From Macrostomum hystrix (lineage: Eukaryota; Animalia; Platyhelminthes), in NCBI GenBank assembly GCA_950097015.1, contig CATNEN010000002.1, forward strand, positions 1,798,001 to 1,862,000: a DNA stretch of 64,000 nucleotides, written 5' to 3'. Below are positions 32,105 to 54,273 of the stretch, one piece after another (the first letter of the stretch is position 1; each line of letters begins with the position of its first letter). The translations under genes were made by a program, and so were the position numbers. Below the pieces are notes generated by a model, which saw nothing but the letters and a program-made list of their open reading frames with translations, did not search any database and had not been told where the DNA came from.

Positions 32105-33620
32105 ATTAGATTAGATTAGATTAGATAAGACAGAAATTAGATACTAAGATCAGATACTGAGATGAAAATCTGAGATTAGACACTGAGATTAGACACTGAG
32201 ATTAGATACTGAGATTAGAAACTGAGATTAGATACTGAGATTAGACACTGATATTAGACACTGAGATTAGACACTGAGATGAAAATCTGAGATTAGACAC
32301 TGAGATTAGATACTGAGATTAGATACTGAGATTAGACACTGAGATTAGACACTGAGATTAGATACTGAGATTAGATACTGAGATTAGATACTGAGGTTAG
32401 ATAATGAGATTAGATAATGAGATTAGACACTGAGATTAGACACAGAGATTAGATACTGAGATTAGACACTGAGATTAGATACTGAGATTAGATACTGAGA
32501 TGAAAATCTGAGATTAGACACTGAGATTAGATAATGAGATTAGATAATGAGATTAGACACTGAGATTAGATACCGAGATTAGACACTGAGATTAGACACT
32601 GAGATTAGATACTGAGATTAGATACTGAGATTAGATACTGAGATTAGATAATGAGATTAGATAATGAGATTAGACACTGAGATTAGATACTGAGATTAGA
32701 TACTGAGATGAAAATCTGAGATTAGACACTGAGATTAGATAATGAGATTAGATAATGAGATTAGACACAGAGATTAGATACTGAGATTAGATACCGAGAT
32801 TAGACACTGAGATTATATACTGAGATTAGATACTGAGATTAGATACTGAGATTAGATACTGAGATTAGATACTGAGATTAGATACTGAGATTAGATACTG
32901 AGATTAGACACTGAGATTAGATACTGAGATTAGATACTGAGATTAGATACTGAGATTAGACACTGAGATTAGATACTGAGATTGGACACTGAGATTGGAC
33001 ACTGAGATTAGACACTGAGATTAGACACTGAGATTAGATACTGAGATTAGACACTGAGATTAGACACTGAGATTAGATACTGAGATGAAAATCTGAGATT
33101 AGACACTGAGATAAAATACTGAGATTAGATACTGAGATTAGACACTGAGATTAGACACTGAGATTAGACACTGAGATTAGATACTGAGATTAGATACTGA
33201 GATTAGATACTGAGATTAGATACTGAGATTAGACACTGAGATTAGATACTGAGATTAGACACTGAGATTAGATACTGAGATTAGATACTGAGATTAGATA
33301 CTGAGATTAGACACTGAGATTAGACACTGAGATTAGATACTAGATGAAAATCTGAGATTAGACACTGAGATTAGACACTGCGAAGATTAGACACTGAGAT
33401 TAGACACTGAGATTAGATACTGAGATTAGATACTGAGATTAGACACTGAGATTAGATACTGAGATTAGATACTAAGATTAGATACTGAGATTAGACACTG
33501 AGATTAGACACTGAGATTAGATACTGAGATGAAAATCTGAGATTAGACACTGAGATTAGACACTGAGATTAGACACTGAGATTAGACACTGAGATTAGAC
33601 ACGGAGACTAGACACTGAGA
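32105..33620. repeat. 13-bp minisatellite (ctgagattaga[t/c]a), ~110 copies, with recurrent variant gagatgaaaatct
   Basis: tgagatt at 32821 and 32834. Confidence 0.95.
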
Positions 33621-33936: not shown

Positions 33937-36488
33937 TCACTTGTTGACAGGCTTCAACAACGACAGACCCGGTGGTAGCGGCGGCGGTGGCTTATCCGGC
34001 TTTTCTAGCACAATTAGGCGCCTCGGAAACTGTTGAACCTCGACCGCTAGCAGCTTCAGGCGCCAGGACTTGTCGTCATTCTGACCAGGTGGATGGGCGG
34101 GTGGATATTAGCAGGTGCTGTTGATTACTGTTGTTAACTCGATTCCACACCATCAAATCTCTCTGGACCATGTCTACCTCTCCTATCTTCAATGTCTACC
34201 TCTCCTATCTCCCGTTTCTACCTCTCCTATCTACCGTGTCAACCTCTTCTATCTCCCATGTCTACCTCTCCTATCTCCCATGTCTACCTCTCCTATCTTC
34301 CATGTCTACCTCTCCTATCTCCCATGTCTACCTCTCCTATCTCCCATGTCTACCTCTCCTGTCTCCCGTTTCTACCTCTCCTATCTACCGTTTCTACCTC
34401 TCCTATCTACCGTTTCTACTTTAGTTGTCAGAAAAGATACATTAGAGTCTCAATCTTCAAACCCTATTCCGTACCATAACTCCCTGCACGTAGACGTCCG
34501 CCCTGTTTATCTGGCCAACCAGGTGATACCGCAGAGTCATAACTCGCTCCGATGTCTCAGCATCGAGGGACTCCTCCGAGTGGACGCGGCTGCGCGATCT
34601 CCTTGAGCTGCCCTCGCCGTGCACTTTGATTGGCTCGCCGAGAGCCGCTTGGACTTGAGGATCAGCGAGGCAGCGCTCCGTTGCTATGGCCTGCAGAGCG
34701 GTTGGCGACTCGCTTGAGAACAGTTCGCGCCATAGAACGTAAAATAGGCCCCCGGTAACTAGGGCGCCTACCAACACGACCAGAGTGTAGGCGAAGTCTT
34801 TGGAGCCTTCAACAACTGTTCAAGGTTGAGAAGCGGCCAGGTTTCTTAGAATAAACTTAACAAACTAGTTGAGCTGGGATATTAACTTTCGTGCGCGTGA
34901 CAGTCCCCTACCAAGTCCACGGACTGAACAGCTATACACCGCCTTTAGATGTGTCACTGGTTATACGTCTGGTGTAGGAAACTTTTTAGTATTCCAATAA
35001 TAGAAAAGCTATACAACAATTACAAGTCGAATTTAGAATACTTCAAGCTGTACTTCAAGTATACACTAAAATGCTGAGAAAATTCCTGAAAATCAATGAA
35101 GCTAAAACCTAATTAGATAACACGTGGCATTCCCTGATTTAATCTAACTCAAGTGCAACCAACCCAACCTGTACTAAGCCGTGCCCAAAAAATAGTTAAG
35201 AATTTATATATATATTTAATAACAAGTAAAGCACTAATTTGAGAATATATTTACAATAGCTAATATAATATAGATACAACACCTACGTAAGGCAGAAACT
35301 AATCAAACCCAAATCAATAGCAGTTAAGACTGAAATGACTCGAAAGACCCAACGACCCGATAAGATTAGTCTCTCGGGGACTGAATGGACATTGATAAGG
35401 AGCCAACTAAAATAAGTGACAACGCAGACGCTAGATTTTCATAAGCCTATCGACATAGTGCTGCTAGCTAACAAAATGTGAAGTTAAACTGCTGGGTGTT
35501 AGCTTGGACTAAGCAATAGACTAAGACACTTTAACACATTAGGCACTAAACACAGACAAACACCAATCAGTGTACAGACACTTGCACACACTGATTCGTA
35601 AACAATAATCTGTGCTGTACAGACAAACACTAGTCATTGCACACAGGTATACACTAGTCATTGCACACAGGTACACACTAGTCATTGCACACAGGTACAC
35701 ACTAGTCATTGCACACAGGTACACACTAGTCATTGCACACAGGTACACACTAGTCATTGCACGCAGGTCCACACTAACCAGTGTAAACAGGTACACACTT
35801 TTCATTTTACAAAGGTACTCCACTAACCAGTGTACACAAGTATACACTAACCAGTGTACACAAGTATACACTAACCAGTGTACACAAGTATACACTAACC
35901 AGTGTACACAAGTATACACTAACCAGTGTACACAAGTATACACTAACCAGTGTACACAAGTATGCACTAACCAGTGTACACAAGTATGCACTAACCAGTG
36001 TACACAAGTACACACTAGTCATTGTACACAGGTACCCACTAACCAGTGTACACAAGTACACACTAGTCATTGTACACAGGTACCCACTAACAAGTGTACA
36101 CAGGTACACACTAATACGGGTACACCCTAATAAGTGTACACAGGTACACAAAGTTCTGTTTCGAAAATTCTGGCAGCCGACCAGTATTGCTTTACTGTGA
36201 GAATCTAGTAAGATTATAATTACCCTTCTGCCCAGCAGTCATGTTGGCATAGCTGGGACTGGCTGGTCGATCAGTGAAAATCACACTTTTGCTCAGTTGC
36301 TGCTGATAGTTCTCTTGCTGTTTTTTCGTTGGCTGCTGTTGCTGCTGCCCAGAGCCAGCTGAACCAGGCGAAGAGGAAGAGCTCAGATAGCGGCGCAGAG
36401 CTAAGGAGGCGTTGCCATAGCAACAGCGCTTGTAAGCAGCCGCCGCAGCAGCGCTAGCCAGGGCGGTGCCTCGAGCAAAGACCAGAGA
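33937..36488 (-). CDS. TIMM21: Mitochondrial import inner membrane translocase subunit TIM21 (~250 aa); initiator ATG not located in the genomic sequence
   Basis: Exons 36488-36224, 34815-34475, 34080-33937 (phases 1,0; 750 nt ending TGA). [40 protein letters not shown]...LGEPIKVHGEGSSRRSRSRV...VEVQQFPRRLIVLE matches the TIM21 family pattern (KDFTYLIVVL.G..VTGGLFY....ELFSS.SP). Confidence 0.9.
34168..34420. repeat. 22-bp minisatellite (tctacctctcctatctcccatg) in TIM21 intron
   Basis: Direct tandem copies. Confidence 0.92.
35560..36150. repeat. 24-bp minisatellite with two variant blocks (cactagtcattgcacacaggtaca; cactaaccagtgtacacaagtata) in TIM21 intron
   Basis: Direct tandem copies; source of the spurious repeat ORFs in this interval. 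Confidence 0.92.
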
Positions 36489-36761
36489 CTGAAGTTTTCA
36501 AAAAGAAAGCATTTCTAAAGTTTAAACAAAAACTGAGAGAATTCTGACTCTGAAAAAAATGTGGCTAAAACAACACAAAAACATGAGTAGGCTTATCAGG
36601 TCTTGCAAAACTGTGATTTTTTCATTTCTTGTCCAACTGGCACCAAGATTGAGACTGTAGATAGTAGACTCGGAGTGGATAGGAGAGGAATTGCCCAACA
36701 GTCTTATCTAGAGCTGACCTGGCAGACAAGGGTTGAGTGGGCTGGCACACGCCCCTCAGGC

Positions 36762-36767
36762 TATAAA
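36762..36767 (+). promoter_or_regulatory. Putative TATA box of DM9 gene 1
   Basis: TATAAA ~95 bp upstream of ATG 36860; the paralog has TATATAAA at a similar distance. Confidence 0.5.
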
Positions 36768-36859
36768 TTCAACGGCCGTTGGCCAGAGTCCCATGGCCGA
36801 AACAGCTCAGCGCAAATTCACTACTCTCCAGCAAACACCAGCAAAGCCCATCAACAATC

Positions 36860-37450
36860 ATGAGCACCTTCAAGAGCGCCGGCGGCAAGGGTGTCGACCT
36901 CTGCCTGTCCTGGGTTAACGCCGCCAACGGCGAAATTCCAGCCGGAGCTGTCAGCGCCGGCGGCGATGTCTACATTGCCAGATGCTTCCACGAAGGCGAA
37001 CTGCTGCCAGGCAAGGTGGCGGCCGGTCATCAGTACTGCTTCTCGCCCTACGGTGGCGAGGAGAAGCTGTGCACCAGCTACCAGGTGAGTGCCAAACTAC
37101 TCAAGAACAGATCGAATCTTCAAGGTAAAGTTTCAGACAGATCAGTTCAATCAATTCTCGATGACAATGGATTATTTTAGGTCCTGTGCGAGACCTGCAA
37201 CCACGGCCTGTCTGGCGGACCCGGCTACCAGTGGGTTGGCTGGAGCGGCAACACGGCCCCCAAGAATGCCCTGATCAGCGGCTCCGACCAGGGCAGGCCT
37301 CTATACGTTGCCAGGGCCAACGTGAACGGCGAATGGTGCTCCGGCAAGTACATCCCTGAGTACGGACGGGCCTATTTCTCGTGCGGCGGTGCTGAGCACG
37401 AATTGCACAGCGGCTTCGAAGTTCTGACCATGTGCGACAGATCCGGCTGA
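36860..37450 (+). CDS. DM9-repeat protein 1 (DUF3421, mannose-binding lectin family), 164 aa, 2 exons
   Basis: Exons 36860-37084 and 37181-37450 (phase 0). Two repeats: WV...NGEIPAGAVSAG..VYIARC.H.GELLPGKV......Y.G.E...Y.VL and WV......P.NALISG..GRPLYVARA..NGEW.SGK....G.AYF..GG.E....FEVL. Confidence 0.92.
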
Positions 37451-38489
37451 GCTGAGCATAGGACTCAAACTATTGGACTCACAATTTTTGACATTTCATT
37501 ATAGTTATTTTAATTACAATAGGAGTTGAACAATTTAGGAGTTTTTTTTAGAAAGTATTCAAATGTAGGACAAATATATATCATAATTAATTTGTTAGGC
37601 ATTGTTATATATAAAATAAAATCCTAGTTGAATGCATACATTTTTTCAGTTTTTCAACTAAATAAACTTTACCATCTGGACATAAGCAAGCATGACAAAG
37701 CTACATTTGCGTTTACAGTTTAAACTTAGTAAAAAGAAGTATGCAAGTAACAAACTGTGTTAATATTTTTCATGAGCCCTGTTTTTGCATAGTTGAAATT
37801 TCAATAATAAATGGAAGTATTTCAAAGTGAAGAGAACCTGTTGCAGTTGTACCTGTTGACTCACTTGTTGTAAAATAGCAACAATTTTTGTTTTACCACC
37901 AATCAAAATGCTATAGTCAATTGGAGATTCATTACATGCAAAAGGGGTGACTTCTTGCCCACAACTGGTGCTTAGTAGGGAAGCATATACACATACTACA
38001 TTTTTTTCTTAACTTTCAAGGGTAAAAAAGGGTCTGTGGACAATGGACTGCAATAGACTTTAATATGGCATATTTAAGTGCATTTTCAATGGTGTACCAG
38101 AGCTATACCAGCAATTTGTCTGCTTCAACATTGGTATGACTTCTTTATGGCAAAAGACATAGAATGGCCAAAACAAGCACCTTTGGCTAGAGCAATGTTG
38201 GCCTATCTAGCACTACTTTGTGGCAATATGCATCTGATGCACATGCATTTGGGAGTTTGGGAGTAATAAACTAGAAACTAACAGTTTTCAAAGTAAAGTG
38301 TTGAGTCAAATAACTGTTGTGTTTTACTTATTTAATTATAAATTATAAATAAATCTCATTCTGAGCATTGAATAAGTCATAAAATAATATTAATTCTTAA
38401 TTGATTCTTATTCATAAAATATAATATACAAGTTGCATTCAATTTGCAAAAATAGCCCTGACGTAAACTGTTGCCAATAACTTCATTAG

Positions 38490-40020
38490 GCAACTAAATA
38501 CAGACCAATCAACCTAACATCCTGCCTAAACAAAGTTTTTAAAAAAATCATTGCGCGGAGGCTAAAAAGCCACCTGGAATCCACGGGCGCACTGGGTGCA
38601 GATCAATGCGCCTACAGGAAAAATCACTCCACTTATGATAATCTGTGCCGCTTGGTGCAGAGTATCATGGTGGCCAAACACAAGAAAAAGAAACTATCCG
38701 CAGTCCTGCTAGATGTCGAAGCAGCCTTTGACTCCATCTGGCAGGATGCACTGCAGTACCAAATGATCCAGGCAAACCTACCGGGGTGGGTTCTTAGGAT
38801 CTGCTCCAGCTACTTTCGGGACAGGTTGGTCTTAGTGAGGGTTAACTTAGCCCTCAGCCAGTCATTTAAACTCAAGGCTGGCGTCCCCCAGGGTGGAGTC
38901 ATCAGCCCACTCTTCTATGTGCTCTTTGTGAGCACCATGCCAACCCCAAAAACACCTGGAGTAGAACAAAGCCAGTTTGCCGACAACATGGCAATCTGGG
39001 CGTTGGTGGAAGGTTTTGTTAAGCTCAGGAAAAACCTGCAGCGCTACCTGGATGAAGTCCATAAATGGTGTGGTGTGCAGGGCATCAAAATCAATGCCGG
39101 AAAAAGCCAGGCCATAACCTTCAATTGCAACAAACCCAGGGTAGGGTGCCAGGATAAATGGCCCCAACTCCACCTGGGAACTGTGCAAATTCAAAACTGC
39201 GATGTAGTTAAGTTCCTGGGCATAAAGCTGGACACTAACCTGAGACTTAATGAGCACGTGAAATCACAAATCAACACTTGCAGAGCGCATGTGATGTGCC
39301 TTAGCAAGATTGCAAAAAAGACCAATCTGAAGCGACACTCTGAAAATGCTATACCAGGCTTACGTGGAGAGCACCATGAAATATGGACATACATGCGCAA
39401 CCTCCCAAATCTTAGCCGGCCGTGCGACTTAGTTTTTGCTCTCATTTGCGACTTAGTTCATTTCATTGCTCTATTTACGACTTAGTTTGCTCTCATTTGC
39501 TCTCTTTTTCTCTCCCCTTTTTCCTTTTCTTCACGCCTTCCTTTTTTGTCCCTTGGTCCCCCCTTTGATTTTTTTGCGCTTGGTCAATTGGTTTTTGCGA
39601 CTTACCTTGCTTGGCCCTCGTTTCACCCGGCCGGTTCGGCCGGGTCGGCCGGGTGTTCCGCATGTATGAATATGGAGCACCCATTCTAACAATCCTAAGC
39701 CTGGGAAAGAGTGACCTTCAGAAAATTCAAAACATTGCCCTCAGAATCTTCTATGGGATCCCATCCTACATCTCCACCAGCTACTTGCATGAGCATGCCC
39801 AGATGCCCCTGGTAGCGAACAGGATTGATGATCTGGGGACCCGCTGGCTCCTTAAAGCCTGCAAGGCTAAAATGCACAACCTAGAGAGGCGCCCTGATCC
39901 GATTAGGATAAACCCGGGATCCAGAATGCCTGTCCTACATCACCTCTGGGAAATCCTGGAGAGGAGAATCGCTGCTGCTACACCAGCAACCAGGGGTCCA
40001 GGCGGGACAAACTAAAAAGA
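38490..40020 (+). mobile_element. Decayed, 5'-truncated non-LTR retrotransposon (LINE; Jockey/I-like reverse transcriptase)
   Basis: YRPINLTSCLNKVF, LLDVEAAFDSIW, GVPQGGVISP, QFADN (expected [Y/F]ADD), VKFLGIKLD; frameshift near 39340; interrupted by a MITE. Confidence 0.9.
39388..39668. mobile_element. hAT-type MITE, 281 bp, TIR CATACATGCG(c/g)AAC, 8-bp TSD AATATGGA, inside the LINE
   Basis: aatatgga at 39380-39387 and 39669-39676; catacatgcg...cgcatgtatg; removing it restores MKYG|APIL in the RT. Confidence 0.9.
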
Positions 40021-49513: not shown

Positions 49514-51793
49514 TTAATTATGTTCATTTAGTAGCAAAATAGGTGCGACAAAAGTAATGTTCGAGTTCGCCAAAGGGATTAGTACACACTTTCGGCGTAG
49601 ATATCTGCAGTCGACCTTTAACTGGTCCTCAGAGATCGGGACATCTTGTCGATCCCGCTCGAGAACGAACAGATCGATTAGCGGCACATCAGTGCACATG
49701 TTGAAATGCGTCTGAAAATGTGTCGCTTTGGGGAGAGGAGCAACTGTAGCGACCGTTTCGGATTCAAACTTTAGAATCGTGCCAAAGCATCTCGCGTTCG
49801 AATCGGGCTGCTGATACTCGCAGATATAACTGACAGATGAACCTTTGCGCTTATTGCTGATACTGTGAAAAGAGATGCCATTAATCTTCATTGATTCAGG
49901 TGTCCGGCGTGATCGGCCTCGGCTCGCCTTTCTTCCTTGAATAAACTGAAATGTTTGAGCCGCTCGAGGACTTTTGATGAAAAACCAATCAAGCAGCTTG
50001 AGAAGACAAAATTTTTCAGCAATTTGCTTTGGATGGTCCACAGTCCCTTTAATGAATCTCTTAAGAAGTGACATACGACCTTCAAACGCAAACATAGATG
50101 TGTTTGCGATGCTTCCGCATCTCTGCACTTGATAAGGTAAATGAAGCAAAAGGTGCGCATTTAATGTCCGGAATGTAATGGGACAAGTTTTTGACATACA
50201 ATCCAGAAACGCCTTTGTTGCAAGTGTAAGTTGCTCAGCAGTCCCAGCCGTGTAGAGGCAGTTAAGTAAAACTGTTAGATACGTCAGCAATCTGCACATT
50301 GAATGTTCAAGGTAAGGTGTTAAAACTGGGATCATAGCGTAGAGACCGAAGTTTCGCAAATCATGCGCTTTCCAGTTCGCAAGAGATTCGTCGAGTTTCT
50401 TAAATCTTTCCATGTCATGAGGGACTGAAAGATTGGATAAAAAAATGTTGATAGCTTTAAACGCATGCCGGCCAATCTTCTCAGATACCACGAACTTCAA
50501 TATTTTCTTGAGCACTCCTTCCAACAAAAGGTGCATCGTGTCCAGAAGAATGCATTCAGGTGGACTCATAAAATTTTGAAGCACAGAGCTGCCTCGGAGT
50601 CCATAGACGGTGTTGTTGCCACTACTAGCCGAAATCCTGCCATGTTGTTCGAATTCTTCACGGCTTCGAATGGTACATAGATTGTCAGCATCAATAGCGT
50701 AGATCATGACGTTCCCACCTTTGTCAGACTTCACGACCTCACCAGGCTCGTAGCACTTTGGGCACGCAAAGTAGCCGTTAAATTGGTTAATACTAAGGAT
50801 GGATGCGAGCGCTGGAAGGTCGCAAACACAATAGGTAATGCTGACACTAAAAAATCTAGGTTCGTTGTTTCTGCCAAGGAATTGTCCTTCAATAGGAAAT
50901 TGCTGCAGCGCAAGGGCCATGACCCTTTCCCATTTTGGCTTGCAGGGCCCAGACCAGAGGCCAAACAAAATTGACGTTTTGGCAGACTGTCGCAGCAATG
51001 GACCCATGTTCAATACTGAGCACTGAATTGGCCACATGCTGTCAGTTTTAGAGCTGTAGAAGCAGGCACCATCTGCGTTAATAACCAACTGAATTTCGAA
51101 TGGGCCTTTGCCATTAGAAACACTGTCTGTCAATACATCACGAAAGCCACGTTTCATCTTTTCAAAGTGGGCTTCAATGTCCTCATGATAGCATTCGAGC
51201 AGAAGACGGAGCTGCTTGATTATTTCGATCTGATGGTAAACGCCAGCTTCGCCTCCCTCGCAACGACAGTCAGCTTCAAACTCTGAACAGTGAATACAAA
51301 TTCTATACACCGAAATCCACTTAGTCCAGTCTTCAATCCCTTCTTTGATAATGCTCTTGAGTGTTCTGACAGTACGAGGAACGGAGGCGCCATACAAACT
51401 CGCAATTTTTAAAAACTGTTCAAGTGCAACATCAGTCGAGTTGTTGAGAAGCTTGTAATACATGAAGCAACTTGCTTTCTCCAGTTTGGTGGTGCTTTCA
51501 AGCAGCTGCTGAGCAGGGTGTAAATCGTCATTGGCTTCTGGAATATCAGAACTCGCACCCACGGTTTCAACGTCAGCTGCTGCTGAGGATATTGCAGTTC
51601 GGAGTTGGTGCGCATTGATTCTGCATGGAATCGTATGATTGACATCCTTGTCTCCAGATTCAAAGTCTTCGGTATCAGATAGAGAAGATACTTCATTTGA
51701 CGAAGCATCGCAATCAAACTCTGCAGCACGAACTACACGGTGTGACTTGATTCTTGTGTCCGCATATCGCTTTTGGAAGCGGAGACGTTGCGC
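49514..51793 (-). CDS. EnSpm/CACTA-family DDE transposase (single 760-codon exon from acceptor 51793)
   Basis: Motifs INADG...WPIQC, CDLPA...FNGYFACPKC, LDTMHLLLEG, WKAHDLRNF, NAHLLLHL...SMFAFEG as in animal CMC/EnSpm transposases; frame open from ttttcag|GCG at 51793 to the stop at 49514. Confidence 0.9.
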   Translation of the reverse strand, partial: AQRLRFQKRYADTRIKSHRVVRAAEFDCDASSNEVSSLSDTEDFESGDKDVNHTIPCRINAHQLRTAISSAAADVETVGASSDIPEANDDLHPAQQLLESTTKLEKASCFMYYKLLNNSTDVALEQFLKIASLYGASVPRTVRTLKSIIKEGIEDWTKWISVYRICIHCSEFEADCRCEGGEAGVYHQIEIIKQLRLLLECYHEDIEAHFEKMKRGFRDVLTDSVSNGKGPFEIQLVINADGACFYSSKTDSMWPIQCSVLNMGPLLRQSAKTSILFGLWSGPCKPKWERVMALALQQFPIEGQFLGRNNEPRFFSVSITYCVCDLPALASILSINQFNGYFACPKCYEPGEVVKSDKGGNVMIYAIDADNLCTIRSREEFEQHGRISASSGNNTVYGLRGSSVLQNFMSPPECILLDTMHLLLEGVLKKILKFVVSEKIGRHAFKAINIFLSNLSVPHDMERFKKLDESLANWKAHDLRNFGLYAMIPVLTPYLEHSMCRLLTYLTVLLNCLYTAGTAEQLTLATKAFLDCMSKTCPITFRTLNAHLLLHLPYQVQRCGSIANTSMFAFEGRMSLLKRFIKGTVDHPKQIAEKFCLLKLLDWFFIKSPRAAQTFQFIQGRKASRGRSRRTPESMKINGISFHSISNKRKGSSVSYICEYQQPDSNARCFGTILKFESETVATVAPLPKATHFQTHFNMCTDVPLIDLFVLERDRQDVPISEDQLKVDCRYLRRKCVLIPLANSNITFVAPILLLNEHN

Positions 51794-52971
51794 CTGAAAA
51801 GTTTTATAGTGAATTTGATGGCTTTAAAAAAGAACTCATTCAATCTTTATAAGCAATATGATGCAATGAAATGAAGCAATATAATATAAGCAATCTTTAT
51901 GAGCTTAGGGAGTGCTGCTCAAAATTTACTATTATCTATTTCGAGTTTTGTACATAAACTTTAGCAGCCTAGAAAAGGAGAATGCCTATTGTGTAATGCT
52001 AGATAGAATACTTTCAAGTTACTGATATTTATAGCTATGACTATTGGCGAACTTGCGAGGCCACGGATGAAGGCTGCATAGTTATAGTTGACAAGAAGCT
52101 AAACAAAGACAGCAAAGGAACTCTGCAGTAGCTGAATGCAGTGACAGTTTATTTTTCACGAATTACATAGAGCATGTCGTGTAATCGTACGCGCCTACAG
52201 AAGTTGGGCTGCAAAGAATAGCAATTCGCAAATCCTTCTCAAATGTACTTGCTTAAGCTTGTTGCTGTTATAAGTTACAACAATTCGTTGCTACATAAAA
52301 ATGTGCTAGCTAGAATTATTGATTTAAATTCCAGCAAATACATATTTGGCATAGTTAAACTATGCATTAAAAAATAGGCTATACCAGCAAACGTTTACAG
52401 AAAAAAATCGCCCACAAGCGTTAAAACACATTTTGCACTTGCAATTTTTTCAAACAAACAATTCTAAATAACAGACTTAATTCGACAAGAAGAGAAGAAG
52501 AGTCATTGAGGCTACAGAGATCAAAGTTGCAGTAGGACCTGGCGATGGGATACGTCCAAAAACAGATTTTGCCAGAGCAAAACATCTCTCTCCCTAAAAA
52601 TTCTGGAAGGACGCAGAGAGACACTAAAAGGTTGCTATAGCTCACAACTATTCGGTCTTCGTGTATGAAACCAATATTTATATAAACAAATATAATGGAA
52701 GTGCAGGCGACGGCGAGACTCTCGCTACGCTTCTCTTGCTTCACTCTTACTGCATTATGAGGTCATTGTGTGGCGCAATAATGCAGCCAAATAAACTACT
52801 TGCCATTCCCTCAGAGTCATAAATTAAGGTTATACGCAGAGCATATCTTCTAGTCTAGCAAACTAATTAGCGTATAATCCGCCTACCAGTTACTTAGGTG
52901 CGTGTACATAATATATATTATTGCCTTACAGTCCAGCAACATCGACAAATAACTAATGTTCAATCCCTCGC

Positions 52972-54273
52972 TTATTCAACAGAATTAGATTGGTCTCCAG
53001 TCTCATTAAGATGACGCTGTATACGCGCTAGCTTCGCAGCGCGATCTCGGGATGCCTGGTTGAGAGCCAGCCGCACAGAACGCCAATGACTTGAGCCGAA
53101 CCGCGCACGGAGAGCAGCTTAAAATAGTAGGTACATGGAAATAATGAGAAGTGTGATAAAACTTTCTCTGGGTTATTACTTTTACGTTTTAACGAAAAAG
53201 AATGCCAAGGCAAAGCACAAGGAGCAACCCATGAATGACTGCGCACTATGCAAATATATTATAACAACACTGATGATAAATTGATACATTTGCCAGAAAA
53301 AAATATTTTTAAAGAAACAAAACAACCTACCTTTTAAGTCTTTGATTAGAGTTTCGTCAGCATTTTCCAGATTAGATCCTTCTTGGAGCTTCTGTTCGAA
53401 CCGATGACGGGGGATAAAGCTTTGTCCCTTCATTCTGTCTACCACTTGGAGGGCAAACTGTGTCGGTGTCTCAGCTGAAATGTCATCAATGCAGAAGTGG
53501 CCGCCTCGCGAAGAAAGAAGATTTAACCCCGTAACTGGCTCAGTTGCCGGGCTCACATTTTGAGCAATCTCGCGAAGAAGTTTGTTTGACATCTTGGTCT
53601 GCTGGACGAGAGTGTTAATTCCATTAACCAAATTCACAAAATCCTTTTGCGGTATCACAATGCCTTCGTTGGTAGACCTAACAGTCGAATCAGACGTTGC
53701 ACTTGAGGCTGACGTGTTTCTACAGGTTATGACCGACGATGGCGACATTGATATCCTGATGGCTTCAGGATGGTTCTCGAAACTTGGGGTCATTGGCAGA
53801 GCAGCAGCCGTAGAGGCAGCAGATGCAGAATTAGCCATTGCAGCTTTTCTAAGGCTGTCAACCTTTTTCTTCTCGGCAATGATTGACAGCGAACGCTTTG
53901 ATGGTGGAGACGCACTTGCCTCCTCATCATTGTCTGTGCCACTGCTCGATGAGTCACTAGATACATTGTCTTCAGCAGCATAATCTGCATCAAAATCATC
54001 ATCGTTATCAAAATCGCCATCTGCATGGATTTCAGCTGTTGTAGTAAAAAAAGATGCACCAGAATTGCATCTTGGAGGGTTCCGATCTGCTGAACTGCTC
54101 CCCAGCTGTTTTTCATATGATTTTGCAAACTTGATAGCACAGTCGGTATCATAATCAGAATTAACATTCTGTGCCAGCGCTGCTTCAAAGTCCTGAATCT
54201 TTTCTATTTTCCCAATGCAGAGAAGAGTTGCAACATGCTTCTGCTCATTTTCGTTGACCAAAACCGTTGCTCC
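52972..54273 (-). CDS. Transposon accessory protein with acidic/Ser-rich linker and C-terminal BEN-like domain (TnpA analogue); 5' end unresolved
   Basis: Exons 54273-53331 and 53117-52972 join in phase 1 (AAA G|gtaggt...ttttaag|CT), giving ...TPTQFALQVVDRM...IKDLKAALRARFGSSHWRSVRLALNQASRDRAAK, resembling the BEN-domain terminal helix (W..V...INQ..RD). Confidence 0.65.

What the first reader, a model, noticed from the sequence alone, without database searches (positions are those of the whole stretch)
36224..36520. TIM21 lacks an in-frame genomic ATG: candidate for initiation on the spliced-leader AUG
Seen: the first coding exon opens at a strong phase-0 acceptor (ctttctttttgaaaacttcag|TCT CTG GTC, 36488) with an in-frame TGA just upstream and no Met for ~80 codons, yet these codons look like a mitochondrial presequence ([23 protein letters not shown]...ALRRYLSS). 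I found no ATG-bearing upstream exon in the ~370 bp before the divergent DM9 gene. Established: flatworm spliced leaders end in AUG, which can serve as initiator Met. Inference: trans-splicing supplies M, giving MSLVFARG..., ~250 aa like other TIM21s, so an essential import factor would depend on the SL for its start codon.
Basis: partly seen in the sequence, partly recalled or inferred. Interest (0 to 1): 0.75.

Follow-up and report, generated by a model that had tools for sequence, protein, structure and literature searches.

The report
TIM21 start codon from spliced leader
In this Macrostomum flatworm the gene for the mitochondrial import protein TIM21 has no start codon of its own, and a transcript contig shows the trans-spliced leader, which ends in AUG, joined in frame to its first codon; flatworms have been known to do this since 2006.

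Summary

- **Gene.** A three-exon TIM21 gene lies on the minus strand. Exon 2 matches Pfam TIM21 at E 2.7e-20.
- **No genomic start.** Exon 1 opens at a CTTCAG acceptor at 36488. An in-frame TGA sits three codons before its first codon. The first in-frame genomic ATG is codon 83.
- **RNA evidence.** One spliced contig (995 nt, depth 81.7) from a public run covers exon 1 and continues into exon 2. At its 5' end it carries 23 foreign letters. With the shared G at 36489, these equal the last 24 nt of the published Macrostomum spliced leader, which ends in ATG.
- **Reading frame.** The mRNA reads ATG TCT CTG GTC. This opens a 250-codon frame whose first 59 residues have seven K/R, no D/E, and an R-x-L/S cleavage-type motif at residues 34-37. 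That is a presequence-like N-terminus, followed by the TIM21 membrane segment.
- **No rival start.** The 371-nt intergenic stretch holds no consensus splice donor and no ATG that stays open.

Translation from the leader AUG is inferred, not shown. The mechanism is established (Cheng et al. 2006), and this scan has logged the same thing for several other genes of this genome. This is a solid new example of a known kind and of modest interest. "Essential" overstates TIM21.

The parts
36224..36488 (-). TIM21 exon 1 (265 nt, 88 codons + 1 base). It has no ATG until codon 83 and encodes the presequence-like N-terminus and a Q-rich linker.
   Evidence: Translation. Contig record 4 of run X8 lies on 36224-36489 with no differing letters, and its loose end before 36224 equals the start of exon 2.
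36489..36509 (-). Trans-splice acceptor: a pyrimidine-rich tract plus CTTCAG. The G at 36489 is shared with the last G of the leader's ATG.
   Evidence: The loose end behind 36489 is 23 nt. With the G at 36489 it equals the last 24 nt of the Macrostomum SL. It fits the [T/C]TNCAG motif reported at M. lignano trans-splice sites (PMC8629364).
36498..36512 (-). In-frame upstream ATG followed after three codons by TGA. It lies in the outron and is removed by trans-splicing.
36490..36805 (-). Outron and shared divergent promoter region between TIM21 and DM9. It holds no consensus donor and no ATG that stays open.
   Evidence: A low-depth contig (3.7 against 81.7) lies on 36553-36721. DM9 contigs begin at 36805-36820.
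36384..36488 (-). Predicted mitochondrial presequence (residues 2-36 of the M-extended protein). R-Y-L|S at residues 34-37 fits the R-3 cleavage pattern.
   Evidence: residues 1-59 have 7 K/R and no D/E, and are rich in A, L and S. No targeting predictor was available, so this is inference.
36240..36242 (-). First in-frame genomic ATG (codon 83 of exon 1, context GCCAACATGA). It is a possible minor alternative start that would give a product without a presequence.
   Evidence: Two out-of-frame ATGs (36418 and 36250) precede it in the mRNA.
34816..36223 (-). Intron 1 (1408 nt, GT..AG), which contains a 24-bp tandem array.
   Evidence: The junction is confirmed by the loose end of the contig at 36224. 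Tandem array.
34475..34815 (-). TIM21 exon 2 (341 nt), holding the membrane segment and most of the TIM21 domain.
   Evidence: Pfam PF08294 TIM21, E 2.7e-20, profile positions 6-113 of 145. The best 19-residue hydropathy window scores 2.09 at exon-2 residues 10-28, which is 34730-34786.
34081..34474 (-). Intron 2 (394 nt, GT..AG), which contains a 22-bp tandem array.
   Evidence: It is inferred from the splice sites, the phase and the contig length.
33937..34080 (-). TIM21 exon 3 coding part (47 codons + TGA).
   Evidence: It gives no Pfam hit on its own. The 706 nt of the contig beyond exon 1 fit exon 2 plus about 365 nt from 34080, which is inference.
36860..37450 (+). Divergent neighbour: a two-exon DM9-repeat gene that carries no leader in the contigs laid.
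   Evidence: Pfam DM9 on both exons. The intron 37083-37178 is skipped in four runs, and the contigs start at 36805-36859 without a loose end.

Best explanation
TIM21 is transcribed from the roughly 315-bp region it shares with the divergent DM9 gene. The primary transcript has an outron with short dead-end upstream ATGs and no cis donor.

The spliceosome joins the Macrostomum spliced leader to the CTTCAG acceptor at 36488. The leader's last three bases, AUG, then sit directly in front of TCT CTG GTC. They form the first AUG of the mature mRNA, in frame with the whole 250-codon TIM21 reading frame.

Scanning ribosomes start there and make a precursor that runs as follows:
- a presequence of about 36 residues;
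- a Q-rich linker;
- one membrane segment;
- the TIM21 intermembrane-space domain.

Without trans-splicing no full-length TIM21 can be made from this locus.

Shown: the gene structure, the missing genomic ATG, the SL-exon 1 junction and the exon 1-exon 2 junction in RNA. Inferred: initiation at the SL AUG, mitochondrial targeting and the exon 2-exon 3 junction.
For: **RNA junction.**
- X8 contig record 4 (995 nt, depth 81.7) lies on 36224-36489.
- Its 23 nt of loose end, plus the G at 36489, equal the last 24 nt of the published 35-nt M. lignano SL (PMC8629364; checked). The same 24 nt end the M. cliftonense and M. hystrix SLs.
- Its other loose end is the start of exon 2.
- The run behaves as RNA, because introns are skipped in both genes.
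- A k-mer assembly can only carry this junction if reads span it. Truncation of the SL to fewer than 31 nt is what a shared leader gives in such an assembly.

**Sequence.**
- ATG|TCT is in frame, and 753 nt make 251 codons including the stop.
- Pfam TIM21 hits exon 2.
- There is no donor and no open ATG upstream.
- The N-terminus has presequence composition and an R-3 motif.

**Literature.**
- The flatworm SL AUG serves as initiator Met in vivo, and more than 40 S. mansoni cDNAs need it (Cheng 2006 as cited in PMC9851317).
- The same was inferred in E. granulosus (PMC3510090).
- The Macrostomum SL is said to contain the start ATG (PMC10468722).
Against: - Only one contig from one run (one study) was laid on the junction, and contigs hide rare isoforms.
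- No ribosome or peptide evidence exists for this gene.
- The SL AUG has a weak vertebrate-type context (T at -3, T at +4), whereas the internal ATG at 36242 has A at -3.
- Exon 1 has no codon-position GC signal (GC3 0.56, 0.58 and 0.56 across the three frames).
- No relatives of exon 1 or exon 2 were found by the word search, which is limited by its length window. Conservation of the ATG-less design is therefore untested.
- Exon 3 was not confirmed by Pfam or by reads.
Confidence: 0.85

Rival explanations
1. The mRNA is trans-spliced as shown, but the leader AUG is skipped or little used. TIM21 would then start at the in-frame ATG at 36242 (codon 83), and the 83 codons before it would be 5' UTR. 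The product would be about 167 aa with the membrane segment near its N-terminus and no presequence.
For: The internal ATG has a better Kozak-type context (A at -3). Exon 1 shows no codon-position GC bias. The open frame has a 5.5% chance under shuffling.
Against: - The SL AUG is the first AUG of the mRNA and is used in vivo in flatworms (Cheng 2006 via PMC9851317 and PMC3510090).
- Two out-of-frame ATGs (36418 and 36250) lie between the SL AUG and the internal ATG and would trap leaky scanning.
- The skipped stretch looks like a presequence: it has no acidic residue for 59 positions and carries an R-3 motif.
Confidence: 0.08
2. A cis-spliced or unspliced isoform from an upstream start supplies a genomic ATG, and the SL form is only one of several.
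For: A low-depth contig lies on 36553-36721 in the intergenic region. Contigs drop rare variants.
Against: - No GT[AG]AG donor lies anywhere between 36900 and 36489. The only weak donor-like site (36821) is beside the DM9 start.
- Every upstream ATG runs into a stop within 4-30 codons.
- The intergenic contig is unspliced, about 22 times shallower, and not joined to exon 1.
Confidence: 0.04
3. The SL-exon 1 junction is an assembly chimera or comes from another locus or organism.
For: The evidence is a single contig. The run's kind is not on record.
Against: - The contig matches 266 nt of the window with no differing letters and continues correctly into exon 2.
- The junction falls exactly at the predicted AG.
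- The leader part is shorter than the assembler's word, as expected when a shared leader branches. The junction words must therefore come from real reads.
Confidence: 0.02

Closest known systems
Flatworm mRNAs that take their initiator Met from the 3'-terminal AUG of the spliced leader (Cheng, Cohen, Ndegwa & Davis, J Biol Chem 2006; called 'slORFs' in PMC9851317)
   Same: The SL ends in AUG and is joined at an AG acceptor directly in front of an ATG-less open frame. The AUG is in frame, and the conserved N-terminal part of the protein needs it.
   Different: The host is a free-living macrostomid, not a schistosome or cestode. The gene is TIM21, and the codons the AUG opens form a mitochondrial-type presequence. 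I found no published survey of SL-AUG-dependent genes in Macrostomum; PMC10468722 only remarks that the SL probably holds the start ATG.
TIM21 / TIMM21 (Pfam PF08294), a subunit of the TIM23 presequence translocase
   Same: It has a Pfam domain hit, one membrane segment before the domain, a presequence-like N-terminus and a length of about 250 aa.
   Different: The start codon is not encoded in the gene. Exon 3 was not matched by the profile on its own.
Other SL-AUG-dependent genes noted by this scan in the same genome (TOP3A, cardiolipin synthase, M3A oligopeptidase, NF-YB, POP5)
   Same: They show the same architecture, and according to those notes the same kind of RNA-contig evidence.
   Different: They are different genes. 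Those notes are AI notes that I did not re-test.

Membership tests
SL-AUG-initiated flatworm mRNA (Cheng et al. 2006 class) | The organism's spliced leader ends in AUG. | tested here: met
   The loose end plus the G at 36489 equals the last 24 nt of the published Macrostomum SL, which ends in ATG.
SL-AUG-initiated flatworm mRNA (Cheng et al. 2006 class) | The SL is joined to this mRNA at the acceptor in front of the ORF. | tested here: met
   X8 contig record 4: the foreign leader letters begin exactly behind 36489.
SL-AUG-initiated flatworm mRNA (Cheng et al. 2006 class) | The SL AUG is in frame with the main ORF with no stop between them. | tested here: met
   ATG|TCT CTG GTC; 251 codons including the stop.
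SL-AUG-initiated flatworm mRNA (Cheng et al. 2006 class) | No genomic AUG can give the full N-terminus. | tested here: met
   The first in-frame ATG is at codon 83. Upstream there is an in-frame TGA and no donor.
SL-AUG-initiated flatworm mRNA (Cheng et al. 2006 class) | Translation actually starts at the SL AUG. | not testable with these tools
   This needs ribosome profiling, N-terminal proteomics or a reporter.
TIM21 (PF08294) | A match to the family profile above the curated cut-off. | tested here: met
   Exon 2 scores 73.2 bits against a cut-off of 24.1, E 2.7e-20, profile positions 6-113 of 145.
TIM21 (PF08294) | A single membrane segment ahead of the soluble domain. | tested here: met
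   The 19-residue hydropathy maximum is 2.09 at exon-2 residues 10-28.
TIM21 (PF08294) | A cleavable N-terminal mitochondrial presequence. | tested here: inconclusive
   The composition fits (7 K/R and no D/E in 59 residues) and an R-Y-L|S motif is present. No targeting predictor or experiment was available.
TIM21 (PF08294) | The C-terminal end of the domain (profile positions 114-145) is present. | tested here: inconclusive
Exon 3 alone gives no hit even at E 10.

The most novel reading that the evidence does not exclude
Macrostomum may have moved the start codons of a whole set of nuclear genes for mitochondrial proteins onto the spliced leader. TIM21 is shown here. Scan notes name TOP3A, cardiolipin synthase, an M3A peptidase and NDUFA5. 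If so, trans-splicing would decide whether the presequence is translated at all. Where an internal AUG exists, as here at codon 83, it would also set the ratio of imported to presequence-less isoforms. Leader supply would then act as a global control on mitochondrial biogenesis.
Probability: 0.1. Interest if true: 0.55.

Novelty: new member of a known kind. Interest (0 to 1): 0.3.

Why it matters
**Annotation.** Gene finders that require a genomic ATG will call this TIM21 from codon 83 and lose its targeting signal. The same applies to every gene of this design. Macrostomum pipelines should add the leader ATG at trans-splice sites.

**Biology.** The locus shows that full-length TIM21 strictly depends on trans-splicing in a free-living, early-branching flatworm. 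This extends a habit documented mainly in parasitic Neodermata. The mechanism itself is not new.

Tried and rejected
- **Word searches.** Searches of the large protein collection with exon 2 and exon 1 found nothing. Their length window (0.55-1.75x) cannot see a 250-aa full-length relative, so these blanks say nothing.
- **Solved structures.** Nothing matched exon 2 at E up to 1.
- **Exon 3.** It has no Pfam hit on its own.
- **SL RNA gene.** It is not in this window, allowing up to 3 mismatches.
- **PMC3101182.** This S. mansoni phytochelatin synthase paper looked like a precedent for an SL-opened mitochondrial leader. It reports no trans-splicing, so I dropped it.
- **Cheng et al. 2006.** The paper is not held and is cited second-hand.
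- **Big representative search.** I did not run it.
- **Species.** It cannot be told from the SL, because its last 24 nt are identical in M. lignano, M. cliftonense and M. hystrix.

Full report
**What is there.**
On the minus strand of 33937-36488 lies a three-exon gene.
- Exon 1 (36488-36224, 265 nt) translates to 88 open codons.
- Exon 2 (34815-34475, 341 nt) matches Pfam TIM21 (PF08294) at E 2.7e-20 over profile positions 6-113 of 145. It holds a clear membrane segment, with a hydropathy maximum of 2.09 at exon-2 residues 10-28.
- Exon 3 (34080-33937) adds 47 codons and a TGA.
- Both introns are GT..AG (1408 and 394 nt), and each carries a tandem array.
- The neighbour on the plus strand, starting at 36860, is a two-exon DM9-repeat gene. 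TIM21 and DM9 are therefore divergent, with 371 nt between the acceptor and the DM9 ATG.

**Check of the observation.**
- The acceptor context is a pyrimidine tract followed by CTTCAG|TCT CTG GTC.
- Walking upstream in frame gives CAG, CTT, AAA, TGA. The TGA closes a four-codon mini-ORF that begins with an ATG at 36512.
- The first in-frame genomic ATG inside exon 1 is codon 83, at 36242.
- Six ATGs lie on the minus strand between 36861 and 36512. Each runs into a stop after 4-30 codons if unspliced.
- That stretch holds no GT[AG]AG donor. The only weak donor-like site (36821) sits beside the DM9 start.
- The open frame is only mildly unusual by itself: 5.5% of mononucleotide shuffles keep 82 codons free of stops, and exon 1 shows no third-position GC bias.

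**RNA evidence.**
The look-up of sequencing runs listed eleven runs, all kept as contigs. I laid four of them on 36160-37700.
- Run X8 gave a 995-nt contig of depth 81.7 that lies on 36224-36489 with no differing letters.
- On the 3' side of exon 1 it runs on into 30 letters that are the start of exon 2. The exon 1-exon 2 junction is therefore confirmed.
- On the 5' side it runs on for 23 letters. Their reverse complement, plus the G at 36489, is identical to the last 24 nt of the published 35-nt M. lignano spliced leader (PMC8629364; identity checked).
- That G is shared between the genomic AG and the leader's ATG, which is why the contig appears to reach 36489.
- The run behaves as RNA. It skips the DM9 intron and TIM21 intron 1.
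- A word-based assembly can only carry the junction if reads span it. The leader being cut to fewer than 31 letters is what a sequence shared by thousands of transcripts gives in such an assembly.

The mature mRNA therefore reads ...TTGC ATG TCT CTG GTC.... The ATG is in frame, and 3+265+341+144 = 753 nt, which is 251 codons including the stop, or 250 aa.

**Organism.**
The leader places the window in the genus Macrostomum. The species cannot be told from it. Two earlier notes of this scan call the genome M. hystrix, which I did not test.

**The acceptor and the outron.**
- CTTCAG fits the [T/C]TNCAG motif that is the top enriched motif at M. lignano trans-splice sites (PMC8629364).
- No same-strand gene lies upstream, so TIM21 is not a downstream cistron of an operon. 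Its leader is added to a monocistronic or first-position transcript.
- A shallow unspliced contig (depth 3.7) on 36553-36721 is most simply read as outron or promoter-proximal transcription.
- DM9 contigs begin at 36805-36820 without foreign letters, so DM9 seems not to be trans-spliced.

**What the leader AUG opens.**
With Met added, residues 1-59 have seven K/R and no D/E and are rich in A, L and S. Residues 34-37 read R-Y-L-S, which fits the R-3 processing pattern, R-x-[FYL]|[SA]. The pattern itself is from my own knowledge of MPP/Icp55 sites. This looks like a presequence of about 36 residues. A Q-rich linker follows, then the membrane segment and the TIM21 domain. I had no targeting predictor, so mitochondrial import is inferred from the composition and from the family.

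**How it most likely works.**
The primary transcript cannot make TIM21, because its upstream ATGs are dead ends and the frame is closed by TGA. Trans-splicing removes them and places the leader's AUG as the first AUG of the mRNA, directly in frame. The steps shown are the junctions. The inferred step is initiation at that AUG. The inference rests on four published points:
- The flatworm SL AUG works as initiator Met in vivo.
- In S. mansoni the SL AUG is in frame in 28% of trans-spliced transcripts and is required by more than 40 cDNAs (Cheng et al. 2006, as reported in PMC9851317).
- In E. granulosus 143 of 187 SL-bearing clusters are full-length from the SL ATG, and 10 of 15 trans-spliced (SL-library) orthologues of such S. 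japonicum genes would also use the SL AUG (PMC3510090).
- All reported parasitic-flatworm SLs end in ATG (PMC12582326).

**Rivals.**
1. *Start at the internal ATG, codon 83.* It has A at -3, whereas the SL AUG has T at -3. Two out-of-frame ATGs (36418 and 36250) lie between them, and the product would lack the presequence. I give this 0.08 as the main start. A minor share by leaky scanning or reinitiation is not excluded.
2. *A cis isoform with its own ATG.* There is no donor, no open ATG, and no such contig. I give this 0.04.
3. *A chimeric contig.* I give this 0.02, for the reasons given under RNA evidence.

**Limits.**
- One contig from one run of one study carries the junction.
Exon 3 has no Pfam hit on its own. 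The 706 contig letters beyond exon 1 fit exon 2 plus about 365 nt from 34080.
- Word searches with exon 1 and exon 2 were blank. Their length window excludes a 250-aa relative.

**Comparison and novelty.**
This locus meets every testable feature of the Cheng-2006 class of SL-AUG-initiated mRNAs. The gene is a TIM21 by profile and architecture.

This scan has already logged the same design on other DNA of this genome. Follow-up notes report RNA support for TOP3A, cardiolipin synthase, an M3A peptidase, NF-YB and POP5. There are further unchecked first-reader notes for RFC4, FLCN, TSR2, LAMTOR2 and NDUFA5. Those are leads, not evidence, but they show the case is one of many.

- "Essential import factor" overstates TIM21, which to my knowledge is dispensable in yeast.
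It is a new member of a known kind, of modest interest.
- Its main practical value is for annotation, since ATG-requiring gene callers will truncate such genes.
- It could also seed a genome-wide survey of SL-dependent start codons in Macrostomum. In the literature I searched I found no such survey for Macrostomum.

Noticed in passing
window 35627-36114, 34168-34419 and 33000-33620: Three tandem arrays lie in or next to TIM21. A 24-bp unit repeats 20.3 times in intron 1, a 22-bp unit 11.5 times in intron 2, and a 13-bp unit 47.6 times just downstream of the gene.
   Followed up: no
window 36805-37541: The DM9 gene's contig has very high depth in run X8 (1872, against 81.7 for TIM21). It starts at 36805-36820 with no leader letters, so the two divergent genes differ in trans-splicing. 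Contigs of organisms A and B lack 15 nt at 37529 in the 3' UTR and differ at 4-5 sites.
   Followed up: partly
window 36859-37470: A sediment metatranscriptome run (X5) holds a spliced DM9 contig 99% or more identical to the window. Two other environmental RNA runs hold small shares. This means either Macrostomum RNA in environmental samples or carry-over.
   Followed up: no
window 36553-36721: A shallow unspliced contig (depth 3.7) lies in the TIM21-DM9 intergenic region. It is probably the TIM21 outron or promoter-proximal transcription, and its strand is unknown.
   Followed up: no
window 38540-39200 (minus strand): A GC-richer stretch right of the DM9 gene reads like a coding fragment of a mobile element. 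I judged this by eye only, and did not scan it.
   Followed up: no
window 51793-54273: Another first-reader note on this window proposes two transposon genes that also begin at phase-0 acceptors without an ATG. I did not examine it.
   Followed up: no
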